From positions 62,001 through 126,000 of the forward strand of contig NIVC01000041.1 in NCBI GenBank assembly GCA_002269645.1: 64,000 nucleotides of DNA, given 5' to 3'. The position numbers were made by a program, and so were the translations under genes. This DNA is from Macrostomum lignano (taxonomy: Eukaryota). The notes beneath the pieces were generated by a model. The model saw nothing but the letters and a program-made list of their open reading frames with translations. It did no database searches and was not told the origin of the DNA. Below are positions 1,441 through 61,300 of this stretch, piece after piece (the stretch's first letter is position 1; each line of letters opens with the position of its first letter).

Positions 1441-1992
1441 CTGTCTGTCAATCACCCTTGAACTGCCCCCCTCCGCTTGCCCATTTCTGTCAACCCGTTT
1501 CGCACCCCAGTCTATTTTCACAGGCCAATGCCATCTGTTAACGAACGCCAAAAGTGCAAACTCGACCGCGTGTGGGGAGAAATTAGAAATGGGAAGTTAA
1601 TAAGACTACCAATCCCGACAGCCTTGACTAAGATTTAGCCGAAATCCCCTTCAATTTGAGCCGGGACTGAAACTCGGCTCCCCACGGGAACACAAAATTG
1701 CCCCAAGAGGCGACTGAGCTGTAAGGAGCCGGGGAAGAAGCAGTTGGGATCTTGGCAAGCGATTGTCTTGGGCAACTGGCTCCTAAAATGCAGAACTTAG
1801 TTTCAAACAAGTGTTATAAGACAGTGAAAACTCTCAACATACAGTTGCTTTTTTCGAAACGAATTTTGCAAAGATTTTTTTGCATAGCGCTGAATGGGGC
1901 TTCACCTTGGGCAAGGCGAGTCGAGAAAAAATCTGAGCTAGAAATTCTTCTAGAAGCCAATCAAATTACCCAACAACCGCCCGCACTGCCAG

Positions 1993-2210
1993 GCTACGGG
2001 CACGCAGCTCCGAAGTCCAAGCTCGGCATGATCTGCACCATCGTGTGCGCATTCTTCGGCATCCCGCTGATGTTCCTCTACCTGAACAACATCGGCGACT
2101 ACCTGGCTGACGGGTTCCGCCTGCTCTACACCAACCTGTGCCGGCCCTATTTCAAAAGGTTCCGCCTGTGCGGCAGTCGCAACCAGCCTGACTCTCAGGG
2201 AGCGGCAGCG

Positions 2211-2248
<38 letters not shown>

Positions 2249-5200
2249 TGCCGGAGGCGACCCGGCGGGCCAGGCCGCGGCTGCGAAGTTTGCCTTCGAC
2301 ATCATCCGCGTCAAAAAGCGATTTGCCCAGCCTCTGCTGCCGTCGGCCGCCGCCGGATTGGGCGTCCATCGCAACAGCCTTGGAGGCTTCGACGAAAGCC
2401 GAGGCCTCAGCGGTGGGGTCACCAAATCGGCGACGCTGCCGCCTGGGCTCCGGCTGAGCAGCTTCGACTCGCCGAAGCCGGACCCGGACGATCCTCGGGC
2501 TCGCCGAGCGTTCGTCACCTCGCGGCTGCTCCCAGCTAAGCAGCTGAAGCCGCAGTCGCCGCCGCCGCCAGAGCAGCACCGCCAACTCCTGCAACGTAGC
2601 GCATCGACACCGCAGCCACGGCTGCGCGCAGCTTCCGCCTCGGTCTCCGAGGAGGGGGACGAAGCCAACGAAGCGCCGATCGTTGATTGGCGCTATTTGG
2701 GCGTCCCAGCTGCAGAGAGAAACAGTAGTGGTGCTTCTGCCGCCACCACGCCGACATCAGCGACCGGCCAACCGGCCCCTGCGGCAGCCGACAGCGAGAA
2801 ATACTCTCAGCCGAGGCGCATCAGCTACATCAGCTTGGACGTCGGCGATTCGAGTAGCGACGACAGCAGCGGCGCAACTTCGAGCAGCTCCAGCTGCGAG
2901 GACGACGACAACAGCGACAAGCCGAAACCCGCCAATGGCGACATTTACGACGCCGGAGGCCAGTCTCGTCGAGCTTCGTCGGACAAGCTCCGTCAACGTC
3001 TGCGTCACGTGACAGTGCCGCTGAGCCTGTCAATCGGAGTGATGATCGGATACGTTGTGCTCGGGGCTTTCATGTTCACGTTCTGGGAGACGGCCGATTA
3101 CGTCAAGTGGTCCTACTTCTGCTTCATTACGCTCAGCACTATTGGCTTTGGCGACATTGTGCCAGGTGAGAATGATTCTTAAATACGTTTTTTTATCATT
3201 TTTTAGACACAGAAGACAGAAATGGAGATAGATATAAACCATACCCAGCAATGCATTGATGCTTTTTCAGTATGTATTTAGTCAGCCAAAATTAGTCAGT
3301 TTCTCATGGTCTATTTCTCGATGCTATATCTCTGACCCAATAGAGCACGAAGTCCAGTTACTTTAATTGAGAAATACCTGTATCAAGGCAAAGCGCTTAA
3401 TGATCCGTAAGCAGAAAGTCTACATTTTCTAGTTGAGAAAGAGAATAAAGAAATCTTTCTGTCGTGCCTGACTCATTCAAGTACGTTCTAACTTATACGT
3501 AAAGAGTTAATATAATCCGTCTACGAGCTGGGTTGCCAAATGCAAGCATTCACAGGTAAGACCAACTTGTGCTTTGCCAATTCCAGTTCGATTTTATTGC
3601 GAGTATCGAAGCCCTTTGAACGTTCGCTAACACATCTCGTACTAATAAAATAATTTGTAGGAGACACTGGTAGTGTCCTTAGTAGTTCTGTTGTCTTTCA
3701 CTGAGAAAGAGCAAATAAATTCCCGACACCATTCTACTGACTTGATGTCCTTGGACCCATTAATAAGTTCCTACGAATGTATTCTACATAAGCCTTCGAT
3801 TCGAATTAATCACATCGGAATATGGCTTAAACAGGTCCTCTCCAGAATAATTTTATTTATTCTACTGACTGGGGATTCCCATCGGGACAGTAAAAAACTT
3901 TAAATGACCCATCGGACGCAAGCGTATATTTAGAAGCTATACAAACTAACAAAATTGTCAGCTCTTAGCTGATTAATGCGAGCGAGCTTCCATGAACGGG
4001 AGTCGCGTGCTGGTGCACAATTTGAACACCAACCTTCGGAGTTTACCGGAATTTTTTAGGAAAACTTCTGCCTCAATTGTATCCCAATTTGCGTGAACGA
4101 CCGGGGAATAGCGAAATGAACACGGCCTGGCAAAGCAGGCACTTTTGCATCATCTTGCCTGGTTTGAGACTTCGTTAGAGAGACGCTTTTGATTGTAAAG
4201 GTAAAACAAAACTGAAAATGAACGAGGCGACTACGCAGTGCGTGTAATTGAGGTCTCTATTGTTATTTTTGCAGTGGTTGGGGGCGGGGGGCAAAAGCAG
4301 CTGTTGCTTGTGCCTGTCTGCTTGTGTCTACGTCGGTATATGTGTCCAACTTCTTACAGGGATTATCTCAATAGCTAAATAGGATCCGAGAATCAGCAGC
4401 GGCAGGCTTGTTTTGATTGGGAAGAAGAAGATTGAAGATTACTCAACGGGTCGACGTAAACTATTTCACTGAGACATAGTTTTATGCGATCATATGCATG
4501 TTTTTATGAACGCATTTAGCTGATGTAGGTGGGCAGGTAGGTAGTTAGATAGGCATATTGGTTAGTTGATTGGTTGATTGGTTGGTTGGTTGGTTGGTTG
4601 GTTGGTTGGTTGGTTGGTTGGTTGGTTGGTTGGTTGGTTGGTTGGTTGGTTGGTTGGTTGGTTGGTTGGTTGGTTCGTTCGTTGGGGTTAGCATTGACTT
4701 TACAATAACAAATTTCTAGTAAATTATAAGCTAAGAGATACGTAGAACCCACGGTGGCCGGCAATGCAAGGGAGTTAGAAATACCAAATCATGAAGAAGC
4801 AGCGTTTGCACGTGCTGCGCAGTTATTAACAATAATGCCCATCCGTCAGCCCTCTTCGTTTCACAACTTTATCCGAGTGGCAAATTGTTTACTTCATCGA
4901 GGAGTCTTTACAACCTCGTTTGTAACATCCGCGAGTTTCTGTCTACATTTCTAAGACATCGTGTTCCATGGTACTTAGTTATCAATACGTGACCCTGAGA
5001 AATTCAGAAATTCGACACATCAATACCTTTTACGAGCATGGAAAAAATAGAGTGAAACACGTCGCTTTTTTGTGACGTGAAGTGACAAAGCTGAACTCTC
5101 TCATTAATGGGACGTTTAATAAGACAATACTTTAAAAAGAGTATTCTATCGTGAACAGAATGGACCTTGATCAGTTACGGTTGTATAACTCAGTTCATGA

Positions 5201-12500: not shown

Positions 12501-15500
12501 GAACTAATATGGAATAAAAGCACTGCAAAGCATTATCAACAGAAAACAGAGTTATAAAAGCAGGCTTAGGCTCATATGGCTATATACGCTATAGCTTAAT
12601 ACATGTCAGGATGAAAGCAAAGCAACACAAAGCAGGGGGTTTCTATTATCGATTATGATAGTAAAATGGGGTTGTTCTTTTTAGATGCATCCTCGATTCG
12701 TGCTGCATTCGGCTTATAGAAATGCATGTAATACTTTTAGTCATTTATTTTTCTGAGAATAGCCCCACTAAGGAGACTTTCTAGTTGGTAGTCCTTGCTC
12801 ACTCACGCATTCGACTGCTACTCACCTCCTCTGGCTGGTCGCTGAGCAGCCGGACCAGCTTCTCAATAACGTTGAGCTCCTGGAACTTCCGAATATTTTT
12901 AGACGACATTGAGCACTTCCAAATAGCTCCGGTAGCCGCCGACAGCAGCTCTTTGTTGTCCGTTTTGTTGAGCAGGCCGACCATCGGCTCCAGGCCGTCG
13001 TAGGAGCGGACGAGATCTCGGGTTTCCTCTTCTTCAGCGCACTGAAATGTTTTTTCGAGGGGACTTGTAGTACCAAATAGTGGATCCCGGAATTAGGGAA
13101 TAAACAAAAATTCACCTTGAAAATGGTGGACGCGCAGTGCATTTGCAGTTCGGCATTATCGCTCTTGAGGTTCTTCACCAGATCCTCAACCATGCCCTCG
13201 GTGCGGATGGCCACGCGGTAGTCGGGCTCGGAGGCGCACTCCTGCAGGGTGCCAACAACCGGGATCAGCATGTCCTCGTGGCGCGACTTCAGCAGCTTGC
13301 CGAGCAGAGGGATCACTCCAGCCCGTTTCATTGCGCGCTTGTTCTTGGTAGAGTTGCTCAGAGACCAGAGGGCCAGGGCGCCGCAGCGGGCTACCTCAAT
13401 GTCGCGCTCAATCTCCGGCGAGGTTGGCCCGTTCAGGGCCGGACAATCAAGCAGCGACACGAGCTTGCGGATGCCGCCGTGCTGACGTACGATCCGTCTG
13501 GCCCGACGGAACTTGGCCACGTTGGCAATGGTCTCGGCTGCCAGGCATTTCAGATCCTTGCTGGGTTCTTTAAGGATATTCACCAGCGTCTGCAGGCCGC
13601 CAAGGTCGGCTATCGCCCGGCGGATCTGCGGATTCTGCGAGATCTCCTTCAGGATCTTCAGCGAGCCGATCTTGCAGCGGTTTTCCTCCGTTTCCAGCAA
13701 GTTGAGCAGCACCTCAAGGCCGCCAACATCGCGGATGGCCAGCTGGCAGACCTCAGTGTTGAGCTGGAAGTCGCGCAGGGCACACAGCGAAATAATTGTG
13801 CTTGTCTGGTTGCCGCCCTTCAGGTAGCGGACAAACTTGCCGATTTGCCAGTACTCGCTCGGCAGGTCCGCGTTGCTCTCGTGTCGCCGTTCCACTGCGT
13901 CTTCTTCCTCATCGGTGCCGGACTCGGAGTCGCTCTCGTCCGACTGTTGAGCAGCTGCGGCCGCAGACTGGGGCTGACGGGCGCTCCGACGCTCCTGGCT
14001 CTGCTGCTCGCTGGTGCCGAGGCTGACCCAGCGCAGGGTCGGGTCCTTTTTGCGCTCCTCCGCCTCCTCCCTGGCCGCCTGCTGATCCGCGTCGCCCTCC
14101 TGATCCGGCTTTTCGGCTCCGTCGGCAGCCTCGTCGGCAGCCGTCTCGCCGTCGCCGCTTTTTCTGCTGGTCCGCTCGCGGAAGTGGCGGCTCCGCTCGC
14201 GCAGCAGGGCAAACAGGCTGCCGTAGAGGTCGGAGCGGCGCTCGAAATCAACGTCGTTCGTGTCCTTGCTATAGCCCTGCAGTGAGAATGTTCCGAGGTC
14301 GGTAATCACAATCAGACAGTTACGATCGGGAGCGTATGGGGTCACACGTTTAGTATTAATATTTCGTTTTTATGTATTTATCGACGCAAAGCAGAAACCT
14401 ACCTTGTTGACGAACCAGCCCTTGGTGCCGGCGGTCACGCAAATAACGTCGGTGTCCTTCAAGTACACCAGAAAGTAGGCGATGTCGCCTTGCAGCTGGC
14501 GAAAATTCGGGGCCCGGTAGCCGTTGCTGAACACATGAACGTAGCCTGCAAAGCGGACGATGCGTAGAGCGCTTGGTGTGAGTACTTCCTCTGTCTATGG
14601 ACCTTTGCTTCCTGGTGGTATACTGTCCGTCAAAAGTTCTGGAACCCTTGCTACGATGTCTTCTAGCGGACATAATTTCAGTCCGTTTCAATTGTAACTT
14701 GATTCAAATGAAAGCTGCGGATCTCAGCTCCATGATGTGGTCAAGAAAAAGTTTATTCGAAGGAGCGCGTGTGAACAGGCCAGTGTTATGTACATAAAGG
14801 TTAGAGAAAAAAAGTGAGGAAAAGACAAACAAGCAATTGTTTTTTACTCTTTTTTACTCTCCCATGAAAGCTGACTGCACAAGAATCCATAAGAGCCTGT
14901 TGATTTCAACACAAGTTTTGGCCATAGACTAATGTTAGCCAGGCTGAACACTGCGCGCAAACCGATTCCTTCCCATGTGTGTTTGCTCCATAGACTCAGC
15001 AACCATAGACAATTGCTTGTTTGTCTTTTCCTCACTTTTTTCTCTAACCTTTATGAACATAACACTGGCCTGTTCACACGCGCTCCTTCGAATAAACTTT
15101 TTCTTGACCACATCATGGAGCTGAGATCCGCAGCTTTCATTTGAATCAAGTTACAATTGAAACGGACTGAAATTATGTCCGCTAGAAGACATCGTAGCAA
15201 GGGTTCCGGAACTTTTGACGGACAGTATATTAAGCTAAGGTACTATAGTAGATCGTTCTCTGGTACTTAAACTTTGCCATGATTTTCCATCTATTTCAAG
15301 ACCAATATTCTAATTGCTCTTGAACACCCATACTGGATTCATTCGTCCATTCGATTGTCTACATCCTGTATCGTTCGTTTGAGGCCATGGAGCTACATCG
15401 TCAAATCGAATCGCATCATTTAGAACACAATATGCGCACTTTACTACTATTCAATTCCACAGATCAGCTAATTTCACAGTGCTCTCAAGCTGTAACTCAC

Positions 15501-54172: not shown

Positions 54173-54365
54173 TTGATTGGCTGTATTGTCTATGGCCGAG
54201 TGCAGCTCTGTGGCAGTGGCTTTGATTGGCTGTATTGTCTATGGCCGAGTGCAGCTCTGTGGCAGTGGCTTTGATTGGCTGTATTGTCTATGGCCGAGTG
54301 CAGCTCTGTGGCAGTGGCTTTGATTGGCTGTATTGTCTATGGCCGAGTGCAGCTCTGTGGCAGTG
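54173..54365. repeat. 49-bp tandem repeat (about 4 copies) containing GATTGGCT
   Basis: Direct tandem copies. Confidence 0.9.
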
Positions 54366-54819
54366 GTTGCTTCAGCGAATGGGGACTCTCCGCTTGAGCA
54401 GCTTCGTTATCAACTTCACTGAAAGAAACTATAGTAGCTGGAGCAACCAGAAGCTAACAAAAAATATGAAAATTAACCAGCGAGTAGAATTTAGGCAATG
54501 ATTAAGCAGTCACTTAGGGCATGAAGTTTAAACTAATTGAATAATACAACGTAAAACAAAATTCGTTCATTGACAACAGAAATGGAAAATAATGAAGTTT
54601 TAATTTACACAGCAAAGCGTCGTTGTCAATCAATGGAATTTTATCAAATTAGTACAAATTCTTATCATACTACTACTACTGAAGTAGTAAAGCAGTAGTA
54701 TCAAGTAGTTTTAGCAATTGGAAATATAACGAAGAAAAACACATTAATGTTTCATGGATATGGTGGCGATGTTTACTGGTCACAGTATAGTGTTGTTCAT
54801 GCGCTCTTATCACCCCCAG

Positions 54820-55155
54820 CAACAATAGCGAGCCCCTAACAACCAATAGCCAGACCCTAGCAGCAGTGGCCAGACCCTAGCAACCATTAGCCAGACCCTA
54901 GCAACCAATAGCCAGTCCCTAGCAACAACAGCCAGGCCCTAGCAACAATAGCCAGTCTCTAGCAACAATAGCCAGGCCCTAGCAACAATAGCCAGCCCCT
55001 AGCAACCAATAGCCAGCCCCTAGCAACCAATAGCCAGACCCTAGCAACCAATAGCCAGTCCCTAGCAACCAATAGCCAGTCCCTAGCAACCAATAGCCAG
55101 ACCCTAGCAACCAATAGCCAGTCCCTAGCAACCAATAGCCAGCCCCCAGCAACAA
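54820..55155. repeat. ~21-bp minisatellite (AGCCAGACCCTAGCAACCAAT)n just downstream of the rhomboid stop codon
   Basis: Direct tandem copies. Confidence 0.93.
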
Positions 55156-55168
55156 TAGTAGTCCTCAG

Positions 55169-56764
55169 CTAGCCAGCATGCCGAGTCCCCCCTCCGCAGG
55201 CCAGTCCGCCAGCAGCCGAATACCATCCGGTGTTGAAGACATTCCACAGAATCGCAAATGCGGCCAAGCCGGCAAAACCTGCTAGACTGACTCTCAGCAG
55301 GCAGCGCTGGCACCGGCGTCTCCGCTGTCTGCCGCCATTCTCAGCGCTGTCCTCGTCACCTTCGCCGTCGTCATCCAGGTCGAAGCTGAGCAGCTGGGTG
55401 CCGACCAGACAGCCCCAGGCCAGGCCGGCAGGCTGAGCACAGTAGGAGCTCAGACTCAGCCAATGCTTGTCCCCAGCCAGTATGGCAAACCGGCGCCAGT
55501 GCCGCTGGTAAATCGCAACGGCAAAATCGGCGTAAGTGAAGCCGACCAGCAGAGCCAGGCGCAGCATTGAGGAGGCCAACAATTGGCGAAGTTTTCCTCC
55601 GCCAGTTTTCAAGTTGCCGCCTCCTGATTCTGTTGTTGGCGCCGTGATTTGGCGCCACTCGGCGCTTAACTGGCCCCAGTTGGCCAGCGCCAGGCCGATG
55701 TGCGCCCCAACTAGCGCGTAGGTGGCGCCGGCGGCGCCAATCAGAACGGCGCTTGGCTCGGCGACGGAGGAGAGCAGAGAGCCGAGCAGGACGCCGCCTA
55801 ACATGACGGCGCCGACGCGAAGGCCGCCGTGGGCCAGCTGCAGAGGCAGGCCCAGCAGCAGCAGCATCAGCGAGTTGAACACCAGATGGTGCCAGCCGTC
55901 GTGCAGTAGAGAGTAGGTTGCGAACCGCCACACCTGGGTGTTGATCGAATGCATTTGTAGCCGCTACCCCCTCTGAATACCCTTCAGTGAATTCCGCTAC
56001 CCCCTCTGAATAACCCTCAGTGAATTCCGCTACCCCCTCTGAATAACCCTCAGTGAATTCCACTACCCCCTCTGAATAACCCTCAGTGAATTCCGCTACC
56101 CCCTCTGAATAACCCTCAGTGAATTCCGCTACCCCCTTTGAATAACCCTCAGTGAATTCCGCTACCCCCTCTGAATAACCCTCAGTGAATTCCGCTACCC
56201 CCTCTGAATACCCTTCAGTGAATTCCGCGACCCCCTCTGAATACCCTTCAGTGAATTCCGCGACCCCCTCTGAATACCCTTCAGTGAATTCCGCGACCCC
56301 CTCTGAATACCCTTCAGTGAATTCCGCTACTCCCTCTGAATACCCTTCAGTGAATTCCGCTACTCCCTCTGAATACCCTTCAGTGAATTCCGCTACCCCC
56401 TCTGAATACCCTTCAGTGAATTCCGCTACCCCCTCTGAATACCCTTCAGTGAATGCCGCCACCCCCTCAGAGGGTCTTTAACCTCCGTAATCGTCAGCAG
56501 CTCTTCACCTCGTGCCGCCGGGCCGGGCAGAAGGCCAGTGGGCTGCTGTAGGGCAGGCCAGACGCCCAGCCGACCCGGTTCCAGGCGGGCCCGTCGTTAA
56601 GCTGCACCGCGCTGACGCAGAAGCCGATCCAAACAGCTAGCAGAGCCAGCGGGATGAACACGGGCGGTGGGTGGCATCTGTACAGCTCGATGTACGCCTC
56701 TTCGGGCACCTCGCCGGGTTCTTCGTCGTCATCGAAGTCTCGCTCGTCAGCAACCAGAACCGAC

Positions 56765-56798
<34 letters not shown>

Positions 56799-57462
56799 TT
56801 CCCCGCTGTCGCTGTTGTTGTCGTCGACGTCGTCGAACTACTCGACGTTGTCGGAGGCGCCGTTCCGCCGCGGCGACCCCGGGATCGGCCGCGCGGACCA
56901 GCCGGTTCACCAGCCGCTTGGCCGGCGCCACCTCCGACCGCATCCGGTAGGTCATGCCGGCGTAGAAATCCGGCCAGCTGGTCCGGCCGCTCCTGTCCGT
57001 GTCCGCCCGCCGAAGCAGCCGAATTAGCTTGCGGCGTCGGCCGCCGGCGGCGCCGACCCGATTGAACAGGTCGAGGAACAGCCGGTTTGGCATGCCGCCA
57101 GCCTCCGAGTAGGGCTGGAACTGCCTGCGGTAGCGCCGAGTCAGCCACTGACGGTACGCCAGCTCGCTGCTCTGTGATCGCTGAGGTGCTGGAAGCGACT
57201 GGGGAGGCGGCGGCGGCAGGGGCAAGGTGGCGCAGAGGCCGCCTCCTGGCGGCTGCGGCTTCCACAGCAGGCGTCGGCAGTCGAGCAGGACGGGTGTACC
57301 CGACGAAGATGCCGTCGGCGCCGCATCGCCGACGGTTGAGCTCCAGTTTGAGCAGCCGGGAAACGAGAATGTCAAGGGCTGCTCAATGGCGCTGTCGAGC
57401 ATAGCGCCGCTGTTGTCCGGGTCTGGCGGCTGCTGCTGATCGGCAGGCAGAGAATGCGCCAT
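55169..57462 (-). CDS. EF-hand rhomboid-family protein (RHBDL1/3, Rhomboid-4 type), predicted inactive pseudoprotease, ~572 aa. Exons 56509-57462 and 55169-55933
   Basis: EF-hand-like ADTDRSGRTSWPDF, YRCHPPPVF, L1 loop RRHE|VWRFATYSLLHDGWHHLVFN, LLGLPLQLAHGGLRVG, TM4 LIGAAGATYAL (GxSG site), TM6 SYCAQPAG (His site), FAILWNVF. Phase-0 GT-AG intron. Confidence 0.92.
55960..56470. repeat. 33-bp minisatellite filling the rhomboid intron
   Basis: (CCCCCTCTGAATA(A/C)CC(T/C)TCAGTGAATTCCGCTA)n. Confidence 0.96.
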
Positions 57463-58144: not shown

Positions 58145-58326
58145 GGGCGCCAGAACCAAATGGCGCCAGCACCAAGTGGGGCCAGCACCAAGTGGCGCCA
58201 GCACCAAGTGGCGCCAGCACCATGGGGCGCCAGCACCAAGTGGCGCCATCACCATGGGGTGCCAGCACCAAGTGGCGCCAGCACCAAGTGGCGCCAGCAC
58301 CAAGTGGCGCCAGCACCAAGTGGCAC
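58145..58326. repeat. 16-bp minisatellite (GCACCAAGTGGCGCCA)n
   Basis: Direct tandem copies downstream of the BOK stop codon. Confidence 0.9.
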
Positions 58327-58379: not shown

Positions 58380-61300
58380 TCACAGCAGCAGCAGCAGCAG
58401 GACGCAGGCTGTCAGAACGGCCAGGGCAGCGAAGGAGGCGAAAATCCAGGTCGCTGTCTGATCTCCGCTGGTCTGGTTGCAGCGGGTCACATCCGGCTGT
58501 TTGGAAAGTGAAGATTTGTAGATTTACAGAGATAAAAATTAAATCTGTAACTTCTTCCGAAAGTAGTAAAATAGGAATCGTTGGTTAGAGGGAAAATAAA
58601 ACAGAGAGCTGGTTTTCGAAGTTTTATTACTTTGAGAATAGTCAGCTATTCTACTTATTAAGTAGCAATACAAGCCTAATAGGCCATTTTAGAGAATAAA
58701 TTGGGTTGGGTTTTTTAGTTAGAGGCAAGGGGCTGTGTGCACCTTGTCGCACTTTAAGCGACATTGTCACACAACCGGCGAGAGGCATTGCTGCCAATTC
58801 CGCCGACTCCCCTGAGCAGGCACACAAGCGCGCGGATACGTACGCAGGCACACACTCACACAGGAGTGTACAGCGGCCCAAACTTTATTTATCATTAGGC
58901 ATGTACACTTCACTGTGCCTTGGGGGTTGGCCCTCAAGGCTGTTAATTGCACGAGCAGAGCCAACAAGCCGAGATTCCAATTTAGCCCCAAATTAATGCG
59001 ACTGCACTTGGAATCGAGCCTGGGCGGCCAGCACGTCAGAGCGCCGCGCCAGATCACTGCGGCTACGGCCCATTCAAAGTTAAGGTTTCCGCAAATTGAT
59101 GCGATATCCGACCTGCGGCCAGTTATACTCATACCGCAGACCTCCGAGCACACATTCACAGAGGGTGTACAGCAGCCCTGCACACTCTGCGCCTTCAAGG
59201 GGAGTGCCCCCCTGCCAAGCGTTCTTTGCAGCAATTCTGCCCCCCCCCCCATTTCAAGGGTATGAAAAAGCTGTAATGACTTATAGTCCCACGAAAATAA
59301 ACTCAAAACAATACTCAACGATAATCCATCCACCCTGTTCGGTAAGCCAGGTGCACAGACGCGTAGCAACGAACGCACCGAATGCGTCCACAATTTTTTG
59401 CGCATAGTCCAGGTGGCCTTGGCTGGCGCAGTCGGCGGCAAAGGCGCCCGCCATGGCGAACAGGGCGACAACTTTGCCCCAGTGGATGCTGTCGCGGCAC
59501 AGCTGGTCGCAGAACATCACAAAAGTCCGTCTAGAGACTTCCTCGGAGTGCATGGCCAAGTTCAGCTGACGGTGCACATTATTGAACAGGTCCGGGTACA
59601 TCGTCTCCAGCTCTTCGCCAACTAGGCGAAGCTCTTCGCCGACTTCGCTGTACTCGGCTGGCGGGCCGAGGGCATCCAGCTGGCGCTGGGTGAGGGCGCC
59701 GCTCCGTCTGAGCCGATGATTGACGTATTCGAGGCACAGGGCCTTGCCTTCGGCCACCAGGTCATCTGGGTTGGGTCCGGCTTGCGAGGCTTGGGATGAG
59801 TCCTGTTGTTGCTGGGGGCCGCTGGCTCGGCCTGTGCTCGGCGAAGATGGACGGCGATGGTGGTGGTGGTGAAGGTAAGACGGTTGCGAGAAGCGGAGGC
59901 TGCGCTGACGTTGACTGATGGCACTATGGACGCTGGAGATGCGCCGGTGAGGCATTTTTTGGGTTCTCTGCGGTGTTTGGCGGCTGATTTGGAGAATTCC
60001 TGTTCGGCTTTGATCACGGGACAGTTGGGATGGGGTAGATTGAGTTGTGGGTAGGTAGGTAGACGGGTAGGTAGGTAGACGGGTTGGTAGATAGACGGGT
60101 AGGTAGATAGACGGGTAGGTAGGCAGATGGGTAGGTAGGTAGATGGGCAGGTAGATAGACGGGTAGGTAGATAGACGGGTAGGTAGATAGACGGGTAGGT
60201 AGATAGACGGGTAGGTAGATAGACGGGTAGGTAGGCAGATGGGTAGGTAGGTAGATGGGTAGGTAGATAGACGGGTAGGTAGATAGACGGGTAGGTAGAT
60301 AGACGGGTAGGTAGATAGACGGGTAGGTAGATAGACGGGTAGGTAGGTAGGCAGATGGGTAGGTAGGTAGATGGGTAGGTAGATAGACGGGTAGGTAGAT
60401 AGACGGGTAGGTAGATAGACGGGTAGGTAGATAGACGGGTAGGTAGATAGACGGGTAGGTAGATAGACGGGTAGGTAGATAGACGGGTAGGTAGATAGAC
60501 GGGTAGGTAGATAGACGGGTAGGTAGGCAGATGGGTAGGTAGGTAGATGGGTAGGTAGATAGACGGGTAGGTAGATAGACGGGTAGGTAGATAGACGGGT
60601 AGGTAGATAGACGGGTAGGTAGATAGACGGGTAGGTAGGTAGGCAGATGGGTAGGTAGGTAGACGGGTAGGTAGATAGACGGGTAGGTAGATAGACGGGT
60701 AGGTAGGCAGATGGGTAGGTAGATAGACGGGTAGGTAGATAGACGGGTAGGTAGATAGACGGGTAGGTAGGTAGACGGGTAGGTAGGTAGACAGGTAGGT
60801 AGATAGACGGGTAGGTAGGCAGGCGGGTAGGTATGCAGATGGGTAGGTAGCTACAAATTTAAGTAAGTATATAGGTAGGTAGACAGTTAAGTAGGAGATA
60901 GGTTAATAGTTATGTAGACAGATTCTGTAGAGCGGCAGATAGACGGGTGGTTAGACTAATATTTCTCATGTGAAGCTCTATAAAACCGCTCTATTTTATA
61001 TCAAGTCCAGGCGCAAAAACAGAGAGCTGTTGAGGTGGCAAAGCGCTCCATTTCTTATCTAATCTGGGAGAGTTCTAGGGGAGCAGCAAAAATGTAAATA
61101 CAGAATAACGGTGGGACTCGACTCAAACTCAGGGCCCAATGCCGCGAAAAATAGGGACTCAATCGGATAAAAAGGCATTAATCCTGGCTCACTAGTATCG
61201 AGTTTCCACTATGACATGTCTTCAACAAGTCCTTGTTCTGTAGGTTATGTTCTAAGCTTCATGAAAAATATGAATTCGAAGCTTATAAAGCATTAAATAC

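What the first reader, a model, noticed from the sequence alone, without database searches (positions are those of the whole stretch)
55169..57462. EF-hand rhomboid pseudoprotease that is not an iRhom: both dyad residues replaced
Seen in sequence: TM4 reads G-A-A-G (Ser to Ala, codon 55730-32) and TM6 reads S-Y-C-A-Q-P-A-G where active RHBDLs have S-F-x-A-H-x-x-G (His to Gln, codon 55433-35). The WR motif and TM2 HxxxHxxxN are kept. Established: the Ser-His dyad is essential, and iRhoms are marked by a GPx motif and a large luminal iRhom homology domain, both absent here. The scaffold is RHBDL1/3 or Rhomboid-4-like with an N-terminal EF-hand. Inference: an independently evolved, possibly Ca2+-responsive inactive rhomboid that could trap substrates or act as an adaptor or dominant-negative in EGF-ligand or ER quality-control pathways. 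The reading frame is intact.
Basis: partly seen in the sequence, partly recalled or inferred. Interest (0 to 1): 0.82.

Follow-up and report, generated by a model that had tools for sequence, protein, structure and literature searches.

The report
Catalytically dead flatworm rhomboid gene
This flatworm (Macrostomum lignano) gene encodes a membrane protein that keeps the fold of a rhomboid protease but has lost both catalytic residues. Related tapeworm genes lost the same residues separately and are still conserved. It adds a case to the known class of "dead" rhomboids rather than defining a new kind.

Summary
On the minus strand, a two-exon gene (57462-56509 and 55933-55169, with a 575-nt GT..AG intron) encodes a 572-aa RHBDL-type rhomboid. 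The catalytic Ser is Ala386 (GCC, 55730-55732) and the catalytic His is Gln485 (CAG, 55433-55435). Both columns are S and H in 117 of 127 related domains.

The WR motif, TM2 HxxxxHxxxN, TM4 Gly/Tyr and TM6 GxxxGxxxG are kept. There is no iRhom homology domain and no GPx motif. An independent, error-prone M. lignano assembly carries the same codons.

The N-terminal "EF-hand" is real by homology but degenerate. It matches no Pfam EF-hand model, and Ca2+ binding is doubtful.

The N-terminus shares two motifs only with a monogenean/cestode EF-hand rhomboid group. In that group the dyad is intact in basal lineages. His is lost in Hymenolepis and Echinococcus, and both residues are lost in Taenia and Anoplocephala. 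The dead forms there evolve under dN/dS of about 0.12.

The Macrostomum gene is therefore probably a separately arisen pseudoprotease. No close orthologue or transcript could be found, so a decaying duplicate is not excluded. I rate it a new member of a known kind, of moderate interest.

The parts
56509..57462 (-). Exon 1 (954 nt, aa 1-318). Start ATG at 57460-57462 in the context ACCATGG. Encodes a disordered N-terminus, the EF-hand-derived domain, a low-complexity linker, TM1 and the L1 loop.
   Evidence: in-frame stop 38 codons upstream; strong Kozak context. tblastn of relatives.
55934..56508 (-). Intron (575 nt, GT..AG, phase 0). It is 52% GC against 67% for the CDS and is mostly filled by a 33-bp x 15.4 tandem repeat (55961-56468).
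   Evidence: The junction restores the family consensus RRxE|VWRF.
55169..55933 (-). Exon 2 (aa 319-572 plus the TAG stop at 55169-55171). Encodes the WR motif and TM2-TM7.
   Evidence: Pfam Rhomboid PF01694, E=3.2e-18, aa 317-413.
56836..57174 (-). Cytosolic EF-hand-pair-derived domain (aa 97-209). It includes the motifs YRQW (57145-57156) and AADPG (56878-56892), shared only with neodermatan EF-hand rhomboids.
   Evidence: The neodermatan N-terminal HMM scores 46.7 bits, against 24.2 for other lophotrochozoan RHBDLs. Motif census. AF2 pLDDT is 71-92, with helix-loop-helix pairs and two short strands. All 27 PDB fold matches are EF-hand proteins, but weak (E>=1.6).
56968..57003 (-). Degenerate EF-hand loop DTDRSGRTSWPD (aa 154-165). 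Oxygen ligands are kept at positions 1, 3, 5, 9 and 12, and Gly at 6. Position 8 is Thr (usually Ile/Val/Leu) and position 12 is Asp (usually Glu).
   Evidence: Aligned to DANRDGRIT(Y/F)E(E/Q)F of relatives. No Pfam EF-hand hit at E<=10.
56761..56802 (-). Low-complexity linker (poly-Arg/Gln, then [14 protein letters not shown], then an acidic stretch). It replaces the conserved LEPDGVWPTS linker of the neodermatan relatives.
   Evidence: (CCG)11 repeat. pLDDT below 50 for aa 227-250.
55925..55930 (-). WR motif (W320-R321) at the end of the L1 loop, retained.
   Evidence: Invariant columns in A1.
55874..55903 (-). TM2 motif H329-DGWH-H334-LVF-N338, matching GlpG H145/H150/N154, retained.
   Evidence: H334 and N338 invariant. 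GlpG numbering is from my own knowledge.
55838..55840 (-). Gln350 (CAG) where all 117 dyad-intact relatives have Glu (GlpG E166 equivalent).
   Evidence: this column is 100% E among the dyad-intact sequences.
55727..55738 (-). TM4 G384-A-A386-G387. The catalytic Ser is replaced by Ala (GCC at 55730-55732, one nucleotide from TCC). Y390 and G394 are retained.
   Evidence: The same DNA is in the independent assembly P0001.
55424..55447 (-). TM6 S-Y-C-A-Q485-P-A-G. The catalytic His is replaced by Gln (CAG at 55433-55435, one nucleotide from CAC/CAT). It is followed by the retained G488xxxG492xxxG496.
   Evidence: P0001 also reads HWLSLSSYCAQ.
55313..55381 (-). Acidic/basic insertion DLDDDGEGDEDSAENGGRQRRRR in the cytosolic TM6-TM7 loop. 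It replaces the conserved LRNLxxKPWER motif of relatives.
   Evidence: Alignment A1.

Best explanation
The window comes from Macrostomum lignano. It holds an intact two-exon gene for a 572-aa secretase-type (RHBDL-like, 6+1 TM) rhomboid-family protein that cannot be a serine protease. The nucleophile Ser is Ala386, the general base His is Gln485, and the universally conserved TM2 Glu is Gln350. The rest of the scaffold is kept: WR, TM2 H/H/N, TM4 G/G/Y, TM6 GxxxGxxxG, the TM5 Asp and the TM7 Asn.

The protein carries a cytosolic N-terminal domain descended from the EF-hand pair of RHBDL-type rhomboids. Two motifs in that domain (YRQW and A-A-D/N-P-G) are shared only with a monogenean/cestode EF-hand rhomboid group. 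In that group the dyad was lost separately and stepwise, and the dead forms are conserved.

The most likely reading is a lineage-specific rhomboid pseudoprotease. It would sit in a secretory-pathway membrane and still use the rhomboid fold to engage transmembrane clients, without cutting them. In that way it could sequester or hand on the substrates of the worm's active paralogues (P0009, P0010).

Shown: gene structure, fold family, residue replacements, retention of scaffold residues, recurrent loss among relatives, and selection on the dead tapeworm forms. Inferred: that the Macrostomum protein is expressed and functional, that it binds clients, and any regulation by Ca2+.
For: - Gene model: GT..AG intron, a junction that restores the family consensus, Kozak ACCATGG and an upstream in-frame stop.
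- Coding signal: 0 stops in 572 codons against 7-17 in the other five frames and 12.8 in shuffles. GC1/2/3 is 0.70/0.55/0.76, like neighbouring genes.
- Family: Pfam Rhomboid E=3.2e-18. AF2 gives a seven-helix core, and the best PDB matches are iRhom1/2 and GlpG (prob 1.0, TM about 0.6 on the GlpG length).
- Dyad: the columns are S/H in 117 of 127 related domains and A/Q here. An independent assembly confirms this. No alternative rhomboid exons exist in the window.
- Scaffold: 33 of 39 columns that are at least 85% conserved in dyad-intact relatives are kept. The six changes include all three columns that are 100% conserved (E, S, H).
- Relatives: full-length alignment to the T. solium protein, E=1e-53. 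The N-terminal HMM scores 46.7 against 24.2 bits. The motifs are exclusive to the 11 neodermatan sequences plus this protein, out of 185.
- Precedent: His-less or dyad-less cyclophyllidean orthologues have dN/dS of 0.127 and 0.12.
- Literature: an EF-hand S54 member without a locatable active site was noted in T. solium (PMC4070553).
Against: - No orthologue closer than about 47% identity exists among 1.84 billion representatives, so dN/dS on this lineage could not be measured.
- No correctly translated copy of the protein was found. The only other copy is the frame-hopping UniRef model P0001. Exact look-ups of the two exon ORFs also found nothing. There is therefore no expression evidence.
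- The protein evolves about twice as fast as active relatives (Tajima test, p from 3e-3 to 3e-6 against P0010).
- It has gained poly-Gly/Arg and acidic insertions and lost the conserved KPWER and EPDGVWP motifs.
- Each of the three key changes is a single-nucleotide step, so inactivation could be recent.
- The position of the rhomboid core in the tree is unstable: sister to P0042 in 50% of bootstraps, P0009 in 15%, and the neodermatan group in 6%. Core HMM scores are equivocal.
Confidence: 0.6

Rival explanations
1. It is a non-functional, decaying duplicate of an RHBDL-type gene (an unprocessed pseudogene in the making). Its reading frame has not yet been broken, and the dyad loss is simply part of neutral decay.
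For: - No close orthologue and no correctly translated or transcript-derived copy was found in the public protein sets searched.
- The substitution rate is accelerated.
- Low-complexity expansions have appeared and conserved loop motifs have been lost.
- Minisatellites fill the intron and abut the stop codon.
- M. lignano has at least two intact active paralogues (P0009, P0010).
- All three key substitutions are single-nucleotide changes (and the sequence).
Against: - A 572-codon frame without stops, where the other frames have 7-17.
- The splice sites, Kozak context and coding GC3 pattern are preserved.
- 33 of 39 scaffold columns are kept despite about 55-65% overall divergence from every relative. 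This is not expected if most of that divergence were neutral.
- Dead forms among the related tapeworm genes are demonstrably under purifying selection.
Confidence: 0.3
2. It is still a protease that uses substitute catalytic residues, for example Thr389, Cys483 or one of the TM2 histidines.
For: The oxyanion-hole His334 and Asn338 and the surrounding architecture are retained. A Cys lies two residues before Gln485.
Against: In characterised rhomboids, replacing either the Ser or the His abolishes activity (established knowledge of GlpG and Rhomboid-1). No relative with an alternative dyad was seen among 127 domains. The TM2 Glu, universal among the dyad-intact relatives, is also changed.
Confidence: 0.03
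3. The Ala and Gln codons are assembly or sequencing errors in an ordinary active rhomboid gene.
For: Each codon is one nucleotide from Ser or His. A 2014 paper suggested inaccurate sequencing as the explanation for the Taenia case (PMC4070553).
Against: The independently produced M. lignano model P0001 carries the same SSYCAQ and the same GCC GCC DNA. Three separate conserved positions are changed. In tapeworms the losses recur consistently across seven species' genomes.
Confidence: 0.02

Closest known systems
Neodermatan EF-hand rhomboids, annotated 'Rhomboid-related protein 2' (Taenia solium KAL5965265.1 = P0014; Echinococcus granulosus P0152; Hymenolepis, Rodentolepis, Anoplocephala, Mesocestoides, Spirometra; Cichlidogyrus P0160)
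   Same: The architecture is collinear along the full length. The N-terminal motifs YR(Q/E)W, F-x-P-Y-x3-GG-x-P and A(A/G)(N/D)PG are shared, as is one EF-hand loop and a 6+1 TM core. Several members are also catalytically dead. His is lost in Hymenolepis, Rodentolepis and Echinococcus, and both residues are lost in Taenia (Gly) and Anoplocephala (Ala).
   Different: Identity is only 30-35%. The window protein lacks the conserved LEPDGVWPTS linker and the KPWER loop, and carries low-complexity insertions. The basal neodermatan members (Monogenea, Spirometra, Mesocestoides) keep Ser and His, so the Macrostomum loss is separate. Intron positions differ from Echinococcus. Orthology rests on the N-terminus, and the core tree is unresolved.
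EF-hand-bearing active secretase rhomboids: Drosophila Rhomboid-4, mammalian RHBDL1 and RHBDL3
   Same: Cytosolic N-terminal EF-hand region followed by a 6+1 TM RHBDL-type core. Ca2+ activates Rho4 (PMC12615303, PMC13597478).
   Different: Those proteins are active proteases with Ser and His and recognisable EF-hands. This one has neither catalytic residue, and its EF loop is degenerate. No direct comparison with those particular proteins was made. The named vertebrate hits were RHBDL2.
iRhoms (RHBDF1/2, Drosophila Rhomboid-5)
   Same: Secretory-pathway rhomboid-fold proteins without protease activity. They are among the best structural matches.
   Different: There is no iRhom homology domain between TM1 and TM2 (L1 is about 31 aa). 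TM4 reads GAAG rather than GPxG. The N-terminal domain is unrelated. The sequence match to iRhom2 (E=0.98) is weaker than to GlpG (E=0.011). The closest homologues are all RHBDL-type.
Active M. lignano paralogues A0A1I8GEZ3 (P0009) and the rhomboid part of A0A1I8H955 (P0010)
   Same: Same species and same RHBDL-type clade, with up to 47% identity over TM1-TM4.
   Different: They keep GASGG and AAH(V/G)GG and evolve more slowly. They are candidate enzymes whose substrates the dead copy might bind.
Other sporadic Ser-less RHBDL-type proteins seen among the hits: Arion vulgaris A0A0B7AG69 (P0128, GAAGG with His kept) and Dimorphilus gyrociliatus A0A7I8W8E8 (P0032, GSAGG)
   Same: Isolated loss of the catalytic Ser within an otherwise RHBDL-type lophotrochozoan protein.
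   Different: His is retained in both, and they are unrelated lineages. They were not studied further.

Membership tests
Rhomboid superfamily (Pfam PF01694 fold) | Significant match to the Rhomboid profile | tested here: met
   PF01694, E=3.2e-18, 66.7 bits (cut-off 22.6), aa 317-413.
Rhomboid superfamily (Pfam PF01694 fold) | Six-helix rhomboid core fold | tested here: met
   AF2 model with pTM 0.64. The top PDB matches are iRhom1/2 and GlpG, prob 1.0.
Rhomboid superfamily (Pfam PF01694 fold) | WR motif in L1, TM2 HxxxxHxxxN and TM6 GxxxG | tested here: met
   W320, R321, H329, H334, N338, G488, G492 and G496 all lie in invariant columns.
Active rhomboid protease (MEROPS S54 peptidase) | Catalytic Ser in the TM4 GxSG motif | tested here: not met
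   The motif is GAAG, with Ala386 (GCC). The column is S in 122 of 127 domains.
Active rhomboid protease (MEROPS S54 peptidase) | Catalytic His in TM6 | tested here: not met
   Gln485 (CAG). The column is H in 119 of 127 domains.
Active rhomboid protease (MEROPS S54 peptidase) | Proteolytic activity on transmembrane substrates | not testable with these tools
   Needs a cleavage assay.
Secretase-type RHBDL (6+1 TM; KEGG 'rhomboid-related protein 1/2/3') | Closest homologues are RHBDL-type, and a seventh TM helix follows the core | tested here: met
   Named hits are rhomboid-related protein 2 or 1/2/3. Helix 518-552 follows TM6, and the conserved TM7 Asn549 is present.
iRhom | Large luminal iRhom homology domain between TM1 and TM2 | tested here: not met
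   TM1 ends near aa 288 and WR is at 320, so L1 is about 31 aa.
iRhom | Pro in place of the residue before the catalytic position (GPxG) in TM4 | tested here: not met
   TM4 reads G-A-A-G.
iRhom | Groups with iRhoms by sequence | tested here: not met
   The iRhom2 chain scores E=0.98 against 0.011 for GlpG in the PDB sequence search. All close homologues are RHBDL-type.
Derlin / RHBDD / UBAC2 pseudoproteases | Match to those families' profiles or presence of their UBA/SHP features | tested here: not met
   No Pfam family other than Rhomboid at E<=1 over the whole protein.
EF-hand Ca2+-binding domain | Match to EF-hand profiles | tested here: not met
   No Pfam hit for aa 96-209 at E<=10. Relatives score 17-27 bits, below the cut-offs.
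EF-hand Ca2+-binding domain | Canonical 12-residue loop (ligands at 1, 3, 5, 9; Gly6; hydrophobic 8; Glu12) and a paired helix-loop-helix fold | tested here: inconclusive
   The loop DTDRSGRTSWPD keeps D1, D3, S5, G6 and S9 but has T8 and D12. AF2 gives helix-loop-helix pairs with two short strands. All 27 fold matches are EF-hand proteins, but with E>=1.6 and prob<=0.3.
EF-hand Ca2+-binding domain | Binds Ca2+ | not testable with these tools
   Needs ITC, a 45Ca overlay or similar.
Flatworm (neodermatan-type) EF-hand rhomboid orthogroup | Shared N-terminal motifs YR(Q/E)W and A(A/G)(N/D)PG | tested here: met
   Present only in the 11 neodermatan sequences and the window protein, among 185 fetched. 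The group HMM scores 46.7 bits against 24.2 for the other group.
Flatworm (neodermatan-type) EF-hand rhomboid orthogroup | Conserved linker motif LEPDGVWPTS | tested here: not met
   Absent. It is replaced by a poly-Arg/Gly/acidic stretch.
Flatworm (neodermatan-type) EF-hand rhomboid orthogroup | Monophyly of the rhomboid core with that group | tested here: inconclusive
   NJ bootstrap places the window sequence as sister to the neodermatan group in 6% of replicates, to P0042 in 50% and to P0009 in 15%. Core HMM scores are 176-181 against 170-187.

The most novel reading that the evidence does not exclude
Flatworms possess their own EF-hand rhomboid lineage that has turned into a pseudoprotease more than once: in Macrostomum, and stepwise in cyclophyllidean tapeworms, with His lost first and Ser later. 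In this reading the Macrostomum protein is a functional client-binding regulator, possibly still gated by Ca2+ or Mg2+. It would antagonise or chaperone the substrates of the worm's active RHBDL paralogues, such as EGF-type ligands in this regenerating animal. That would make it a second, independent iRhom-like invention from a secretase rhomboid.
Probability: 0.15. Interest if true: 0.65.

Novelty: new member of a known kind. Interest (0 to 1): 0.42.

Why it matters
Rhomboid pseudoproteases such as iRhoms and Derlins are major regulators of membrane-protein trafficking and degradation. How a protease becomes a non-catalytic regulator is mostly inferred from ancient events.

This gene and its tapeworm relatives offer younger, graded examples within one protein lineage: dyad intact, His lost, and both residues lost. 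The dead tapeworm forms are clearly under purifying selection. That makes the transition open to experiment through revertants, client capture and RNAi, in a tractable regenerating flatworm and in medically relevant cestodes (Taenia, Echinococcus).

On its own, the Macrostomum gene is one more sporadic inactive rhomboid. Its function and expression are unproven.

Tried and rejected
- **Word-index homology searches.** Searches with the full protein and with a version stripped of low-complexity stretches were swamped. They returned only the broken M. lignano model P0001 and one wallaby RHBDL2. The exhaustive HMMER search was what worked.
- **Exact look-ups.** Look-ups of the exon-1 ORF, the exon-2 ORF and P0001 in public assemblies found nothing. 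The spliced protein was not accepted by the tool. No second locus or transcript could therefore be obtained, and dN/dS for this lineage could not be computed.
- **Intron positions as an orthology marker.** The Echinococcus gene has five introns, none at the window's RRHE|VWRF junction. The nearest lies about 14 codons downstream. This was uninformative.
- **Core-domain tree and group HMMs.** NJ with 200 bootstraps and group-specific HMMs did not resolve the sister group of the window protein. Only the N-terminal domain discriminates.
- **Alternative exons.** tblastn with six active relatives found only the two known exons, so there is no hidden exon encoding an active TM4 or TM6.
- **Literature.** A search for Macrostomum plus rhomboid gave nothing relevant.
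- **Organism behind P0042.** This is the Logan sequence that most often pairs with the window protein. It comes from run DRR639055, and the organism could not be determined offline.
Full report
**What is at the locus**

The minus strand between 57462 and 55169 carries two long ORFs in different frames, separated by a 33-bp minisatellite. Joining CACGAG|gtgaag (last exon base 56509) to cccag|GTGTGG (first exon base 55933) removes a 575-nt GT..AG intron in phase 0. The result is a 1719-nt CDS encoding 572 aa.

The junction reads ...FCPARRHE|VWRFATYSLLH. This reproduces the family consensus RRxEVWRF without a gap, so the splice model is validated by homology. The ATG sits in ACCATGG, with an in-frame stop 38 codons upstream.

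The coding frame has no stop. The other five frames have 7-17, and composition-matched shuffles average 12.8. GC1/2/3 is 0.70/0.55/0.76, the same pattern as neighbouring coding ORFs. The intron is 52% GC against 67% for the CDS.

**Which organism**

The only near-identical protein in 5.8 billion clusters is UniRef A0A1I8JQ84 of Macrostomum lignano (P0001). Piecewise comparison shows that P0001 is this same locus read from an indel-ridden assembly. It hops between the three frames every few dozen residues, with high local identity (up to 100% in several pieces). It is also fused to a downstream SNF-type transporter. The window is therefore M. lignano.

P0001 serves as an independent check. It contains HWLSLSSYCAQ. 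In a shifted frame it also contains the exact DNA of L-I-G-A-A-G-A-T.

**The observation**

Pfam finds only Rhomboid (E=3.2e-18, aa 317-413). I extracted 127 complete rhomboid domains from the 185 proteins fetched and aligned them to one profile. The catalytic columns are S/H in 117 of them, and the window protein is the only A/Q.

The following residues are retained (GlpG numbering is from my own knowledge):
- W320 and R321 (the WR motif).
- H329, H334 and N338 (GlpG H145, H150, N154).
- G384, G387, Y390 and G394.
- D454.
- G488, G492 and G496.
- N549.

Of 39 columns that are at least 85% conserved among the 117 dyad-intact relatives, the window protein keeps 33. The six changes include all three columns that are 100% conserved there: Glu to Gln350 (GlpG E166), Ser to Ala386, and His to Gln485. 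Each of these three is a single-nucleotide step from the ancestral codon.

No other rhomboid-like exon exists in the window. AlphaFold2 (35-sequence alignment, pTM 0.64) gives a seven-helix membrane core. The best PDB matches are iRhom1/2 and GlpG.

**Not an iRhom**

The L1 loop between TM1 (ending near aa 288) and WR (aa 320) is about 31 residues, so there is no iRhom homology domain. TM4 is GAAG, not GPxG. The iRhom2 chain matches at E=0.98 against 0.011 for GlpG. All close homologues are RHBDL-type proteins, annotated 'rhomboid-related protein 2' or '1/2/3'. No Derlin, UBA or other domain is detected.

**The N-terminal domain**

Residues 97-209 align with the cytosolic N-terminus of related RHBDL-type proteins. 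In those, Pfam detects EF-hand models at sub-threshold scores of 17-27 bits. UniProt names one of them an EF-hand domain-containing protein.

In the window protein no EF-hand model matches even at E<=10. The loop DTDRSGRTSWPD keeps oxygen ligands at positions 1, 3, 5 and 9, and Gly at 6. It has Thr at position 8 and Asp instead of the bidentate Glu at position 12.

AF2 predicts two helix-loop-helix units bridged by two short strands, with pLDDT 71-92 in the full-length model. All 27 PDB fold matches of the isolated domain are EF-hand proteins (calmodulin, troponin C, centrin, ALG-2, EH domains). They are statistically weak, with E>=1.6.

The domain is therefore EF-hand-derived, but Ca2+ binding is doubtful.

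**Relatives, and the finding that changes the picture**

The exhaustive search of 1.84 billion representatives gave 2268 hits. None is closer than about 47% identity over TM1-TM4. One hit, Taenia solium 'Rhomboid-related protein 2' (P0014), aligns over nearly the whole length (aa 99-555, E=1e-53). It too lacks the dyad.

Searching with P0014 recovered a monogenean/cestode group with this distribution:

| Lineage | Ser | His |
|---|---|---|
| Cichlidogyrus (Monogenea), Spirometra, an unnamed Logan sequence (P0159), Mesocestoides | kept | kept |
| Hymenolepis weldensis, H. microstoma, Rodentolepis nana, Echinococcus granulosus | kept | lost (..APTIAG / ..SPIPAG) |
| Taenia solium, T. asiatica | lost (GAGGG) | lost |
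| Anoplocephala | lost (GAAGG) | lost |

This distribution implies that His was lost once within Cyclophyllidea. Ser was then lost at least twice afterwards.

The dead genes are not decaying. Nei-Gojobori dN/dS is 0.127 for T. solium against E. granulosus (451 codons). It is 0.12 for H. weldensis against R. nana (477 codons). The values are similar for the N-terminal domain and the core.

Yan et al. 2014 (PMC4070553) had noted that the single T. solium S54 member has an EF-hand. They could not locate its active site and suggested a sequencing error. The consistency across seven genomes shows the loss is real.

**How the Macrostomum protein relates to that group**

The motifs YR(Q/E)W and A(A/G)(N/D)PG occur only in the 11 neodermatan sequences and the window protein, among all 185 proteins fetched. 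An HMM of the neodermatan N-termini scores the window N-terminus at 46.7 bits. An HMM of other lophotrochozoan RHBDL N-termini scores it at 24.2 bits.

The rhomboid core does not discriminate. NJ bootstraps place the window sequence with the unnamed Logan protein P0042 in 50% of replicates. It goes with the M. lignano paralogue P0009 in 15% and with the neodermatan clade in 6%. Group HMM scores are about equal. The conserved neodermatan linker motif LEPDGVWPTS is absent, and intron positions differ.

Membership of that orthogroup is therefore likely but not established. Either way, basal neodermatans keep the dyad, so the Macrostomum loss is a separate event. M. lignano also has at least two dyad-intact paralogues (P0009 = A0A1I8GEZ3, and the rhomboid part of P0010 = A0A1I8H955).

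**Live gene or decaying copy?**

For a live gene:
- An uninterrupted 572-codon frame.
- Intact splice and start signals.
- Coding-type GC3.
- Retention of 85% of the most conserved scaffold positions despite 55-65% overall divergence.

Against:
- A rate about twice that of active relatives. Tajima tests against P0010, P0003 and P0154 give p between about 3e-2 and 3e-6. The difference from P0009 is marginal at best (p 0.03-0.3) and there is none from P0042.
- Poly-Gly/Arg and acidic insertions, and loss of the KPWER loop motif.
- No correctly translated copy anywhere in about 15 billion public proteins, so no sign of a transcript-derived model.

The dead cyclophyllidean proteins show the same kind of rate acceleration (3-4 fold) while being under clear purifying selection. 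Acceleration alone therefore does not indicate decay. I put about 0.6 on a functional pseudoprotease and about 0.3 on a decaying duplicate.

**Likely mechanism (inferred)**

By analogy with iRhoms and Derlins, the protein would use its conserved rhomboid fold to recognise transmembrane segments without cleaving them (PMC12615303, PMC3149277). It would thereby retain, hand over or mask clients that would otherwise be cut by the active paralogues.

In active relatives, cytosolic EF-hands couple Ca2+ to substrate gating. This is described for Drosophila Rho4, and RHBDL1/3 carry EF-hands (PMC13597478). Here the degenerate loop may have lost that input, or may act as a protein-interaction module. 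None of this was testable with the tools available.

**Novelty**

Inactive rhomboids outside the iRhoms are a recognised category (PMC7065720, citing Lemberg & Freeman 2007). Other sporadic Ser-less RHBDL-type proteins turned up among the hits, in Arion and Dimorphilus. The window gene is therefore a new member of a known kind.

The more interesting result is the recurrent, stepwise and selected loss of the dyad within one flatworm EF-hand rhomboid lineage. It emerged from following this finding outside the window.

Noticed in passing
window 55961-56468: A 33-bp tandem repeat (15.4 copies, 97% matches) fills most of the rhomboid gene's only intron. It creates a spurious 363-aa ORF (55371-56462, minus strand) that overlaps exon 2 in another frame.
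   Followed up: partly
window 54814-55158; also 54173-54366 and 58146-58324: A 21-bp x 16.8 minisatellite starts 11 nt after the stop codon, in the presumed 3' UTR. Further arrays (49 bp x 4 and 16 bp x 11) flank the gene. The whole window is rich in such arrays, and they generate many long spurious ORFs (for example 24.2-25.3 kb, 32.2-33.4 kb, 41.3-42.1 kb, 48.2-49.2 kb).
   Followed up: no
window 59281-59955 (-): The neighbouring upstream ORF is a Bcl-2 family apoptosis regulator (Pfam PF00452, E=6.9e-24).
   Followed up: partly
window ~49437-49225 and 48169-48071 (-): These are exons of a sodium:neurotransmitter symporter-type gene about 6 kb downstream. They were wrongly fused to the rhomboid in the UniRef model A0A1I8JQ84 (P0001). 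That model also hops between reading frames and is misnamed 'Protein kinase domain-containing protein'.
   Followed up: partly
window 12822-14345 (-) and 1752-3182 (+): An Armadillo-repeat protein ORF (Pfam Arm, E=2.8e-21) and a two-pore-type K+ channel exon (Ion_trans_2, E=6.7e-18, with an internal poly-Gly tract).
   Followed up: no
P0014 / L003 (Taenia solium) versus L002 (Echinococcus granulosus): The T. solium model has a 16-aa insertion (QQAAQKMTTTLSTTTIG), longer still in T. asiatica. It lies exactly where Echinococcus has an intron (after ...FLVHQ) and is probably retained intron sequence in the annotation. It removes the conserved TM2 His of LVH from the model.
   Followed up: partly
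P0152-P0157, P0014, P0151, P0156 (cyclophyllidean cestodes): Stepwise loss of the rhomboid dyad in tapeworms. His is absent in all Hymenolepis, Rodentolepis, Echinococcus, Taenia and Anoplocephala orthologues. Ser is additionally lost in Taenia (Gly) and Anoplocephala (Ala). dN/dS is about 0.12, so these are conserved pseudoproteases of medically relevant parasites.
   Followed up: yes
P0128 (Arion vulgaris A0A0B7AG69), P0032 (Dimorphilus gyrociliatus A0A7I8W8E8): Two further RHBDL-type lophotrochozoan proteins lack the catalytic Ser (GAAGG and GSAGG) but keep the TM6 His.
   Followed up: no
P0002 (Pseudolycoriella hygida), P0005 (Molorchus minor), P0007: Several insect hits are gene models with two to four tandem rhomboid domains in one protein. 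These are probably tandem gene arrays merged by annotation.
   Followed up: no
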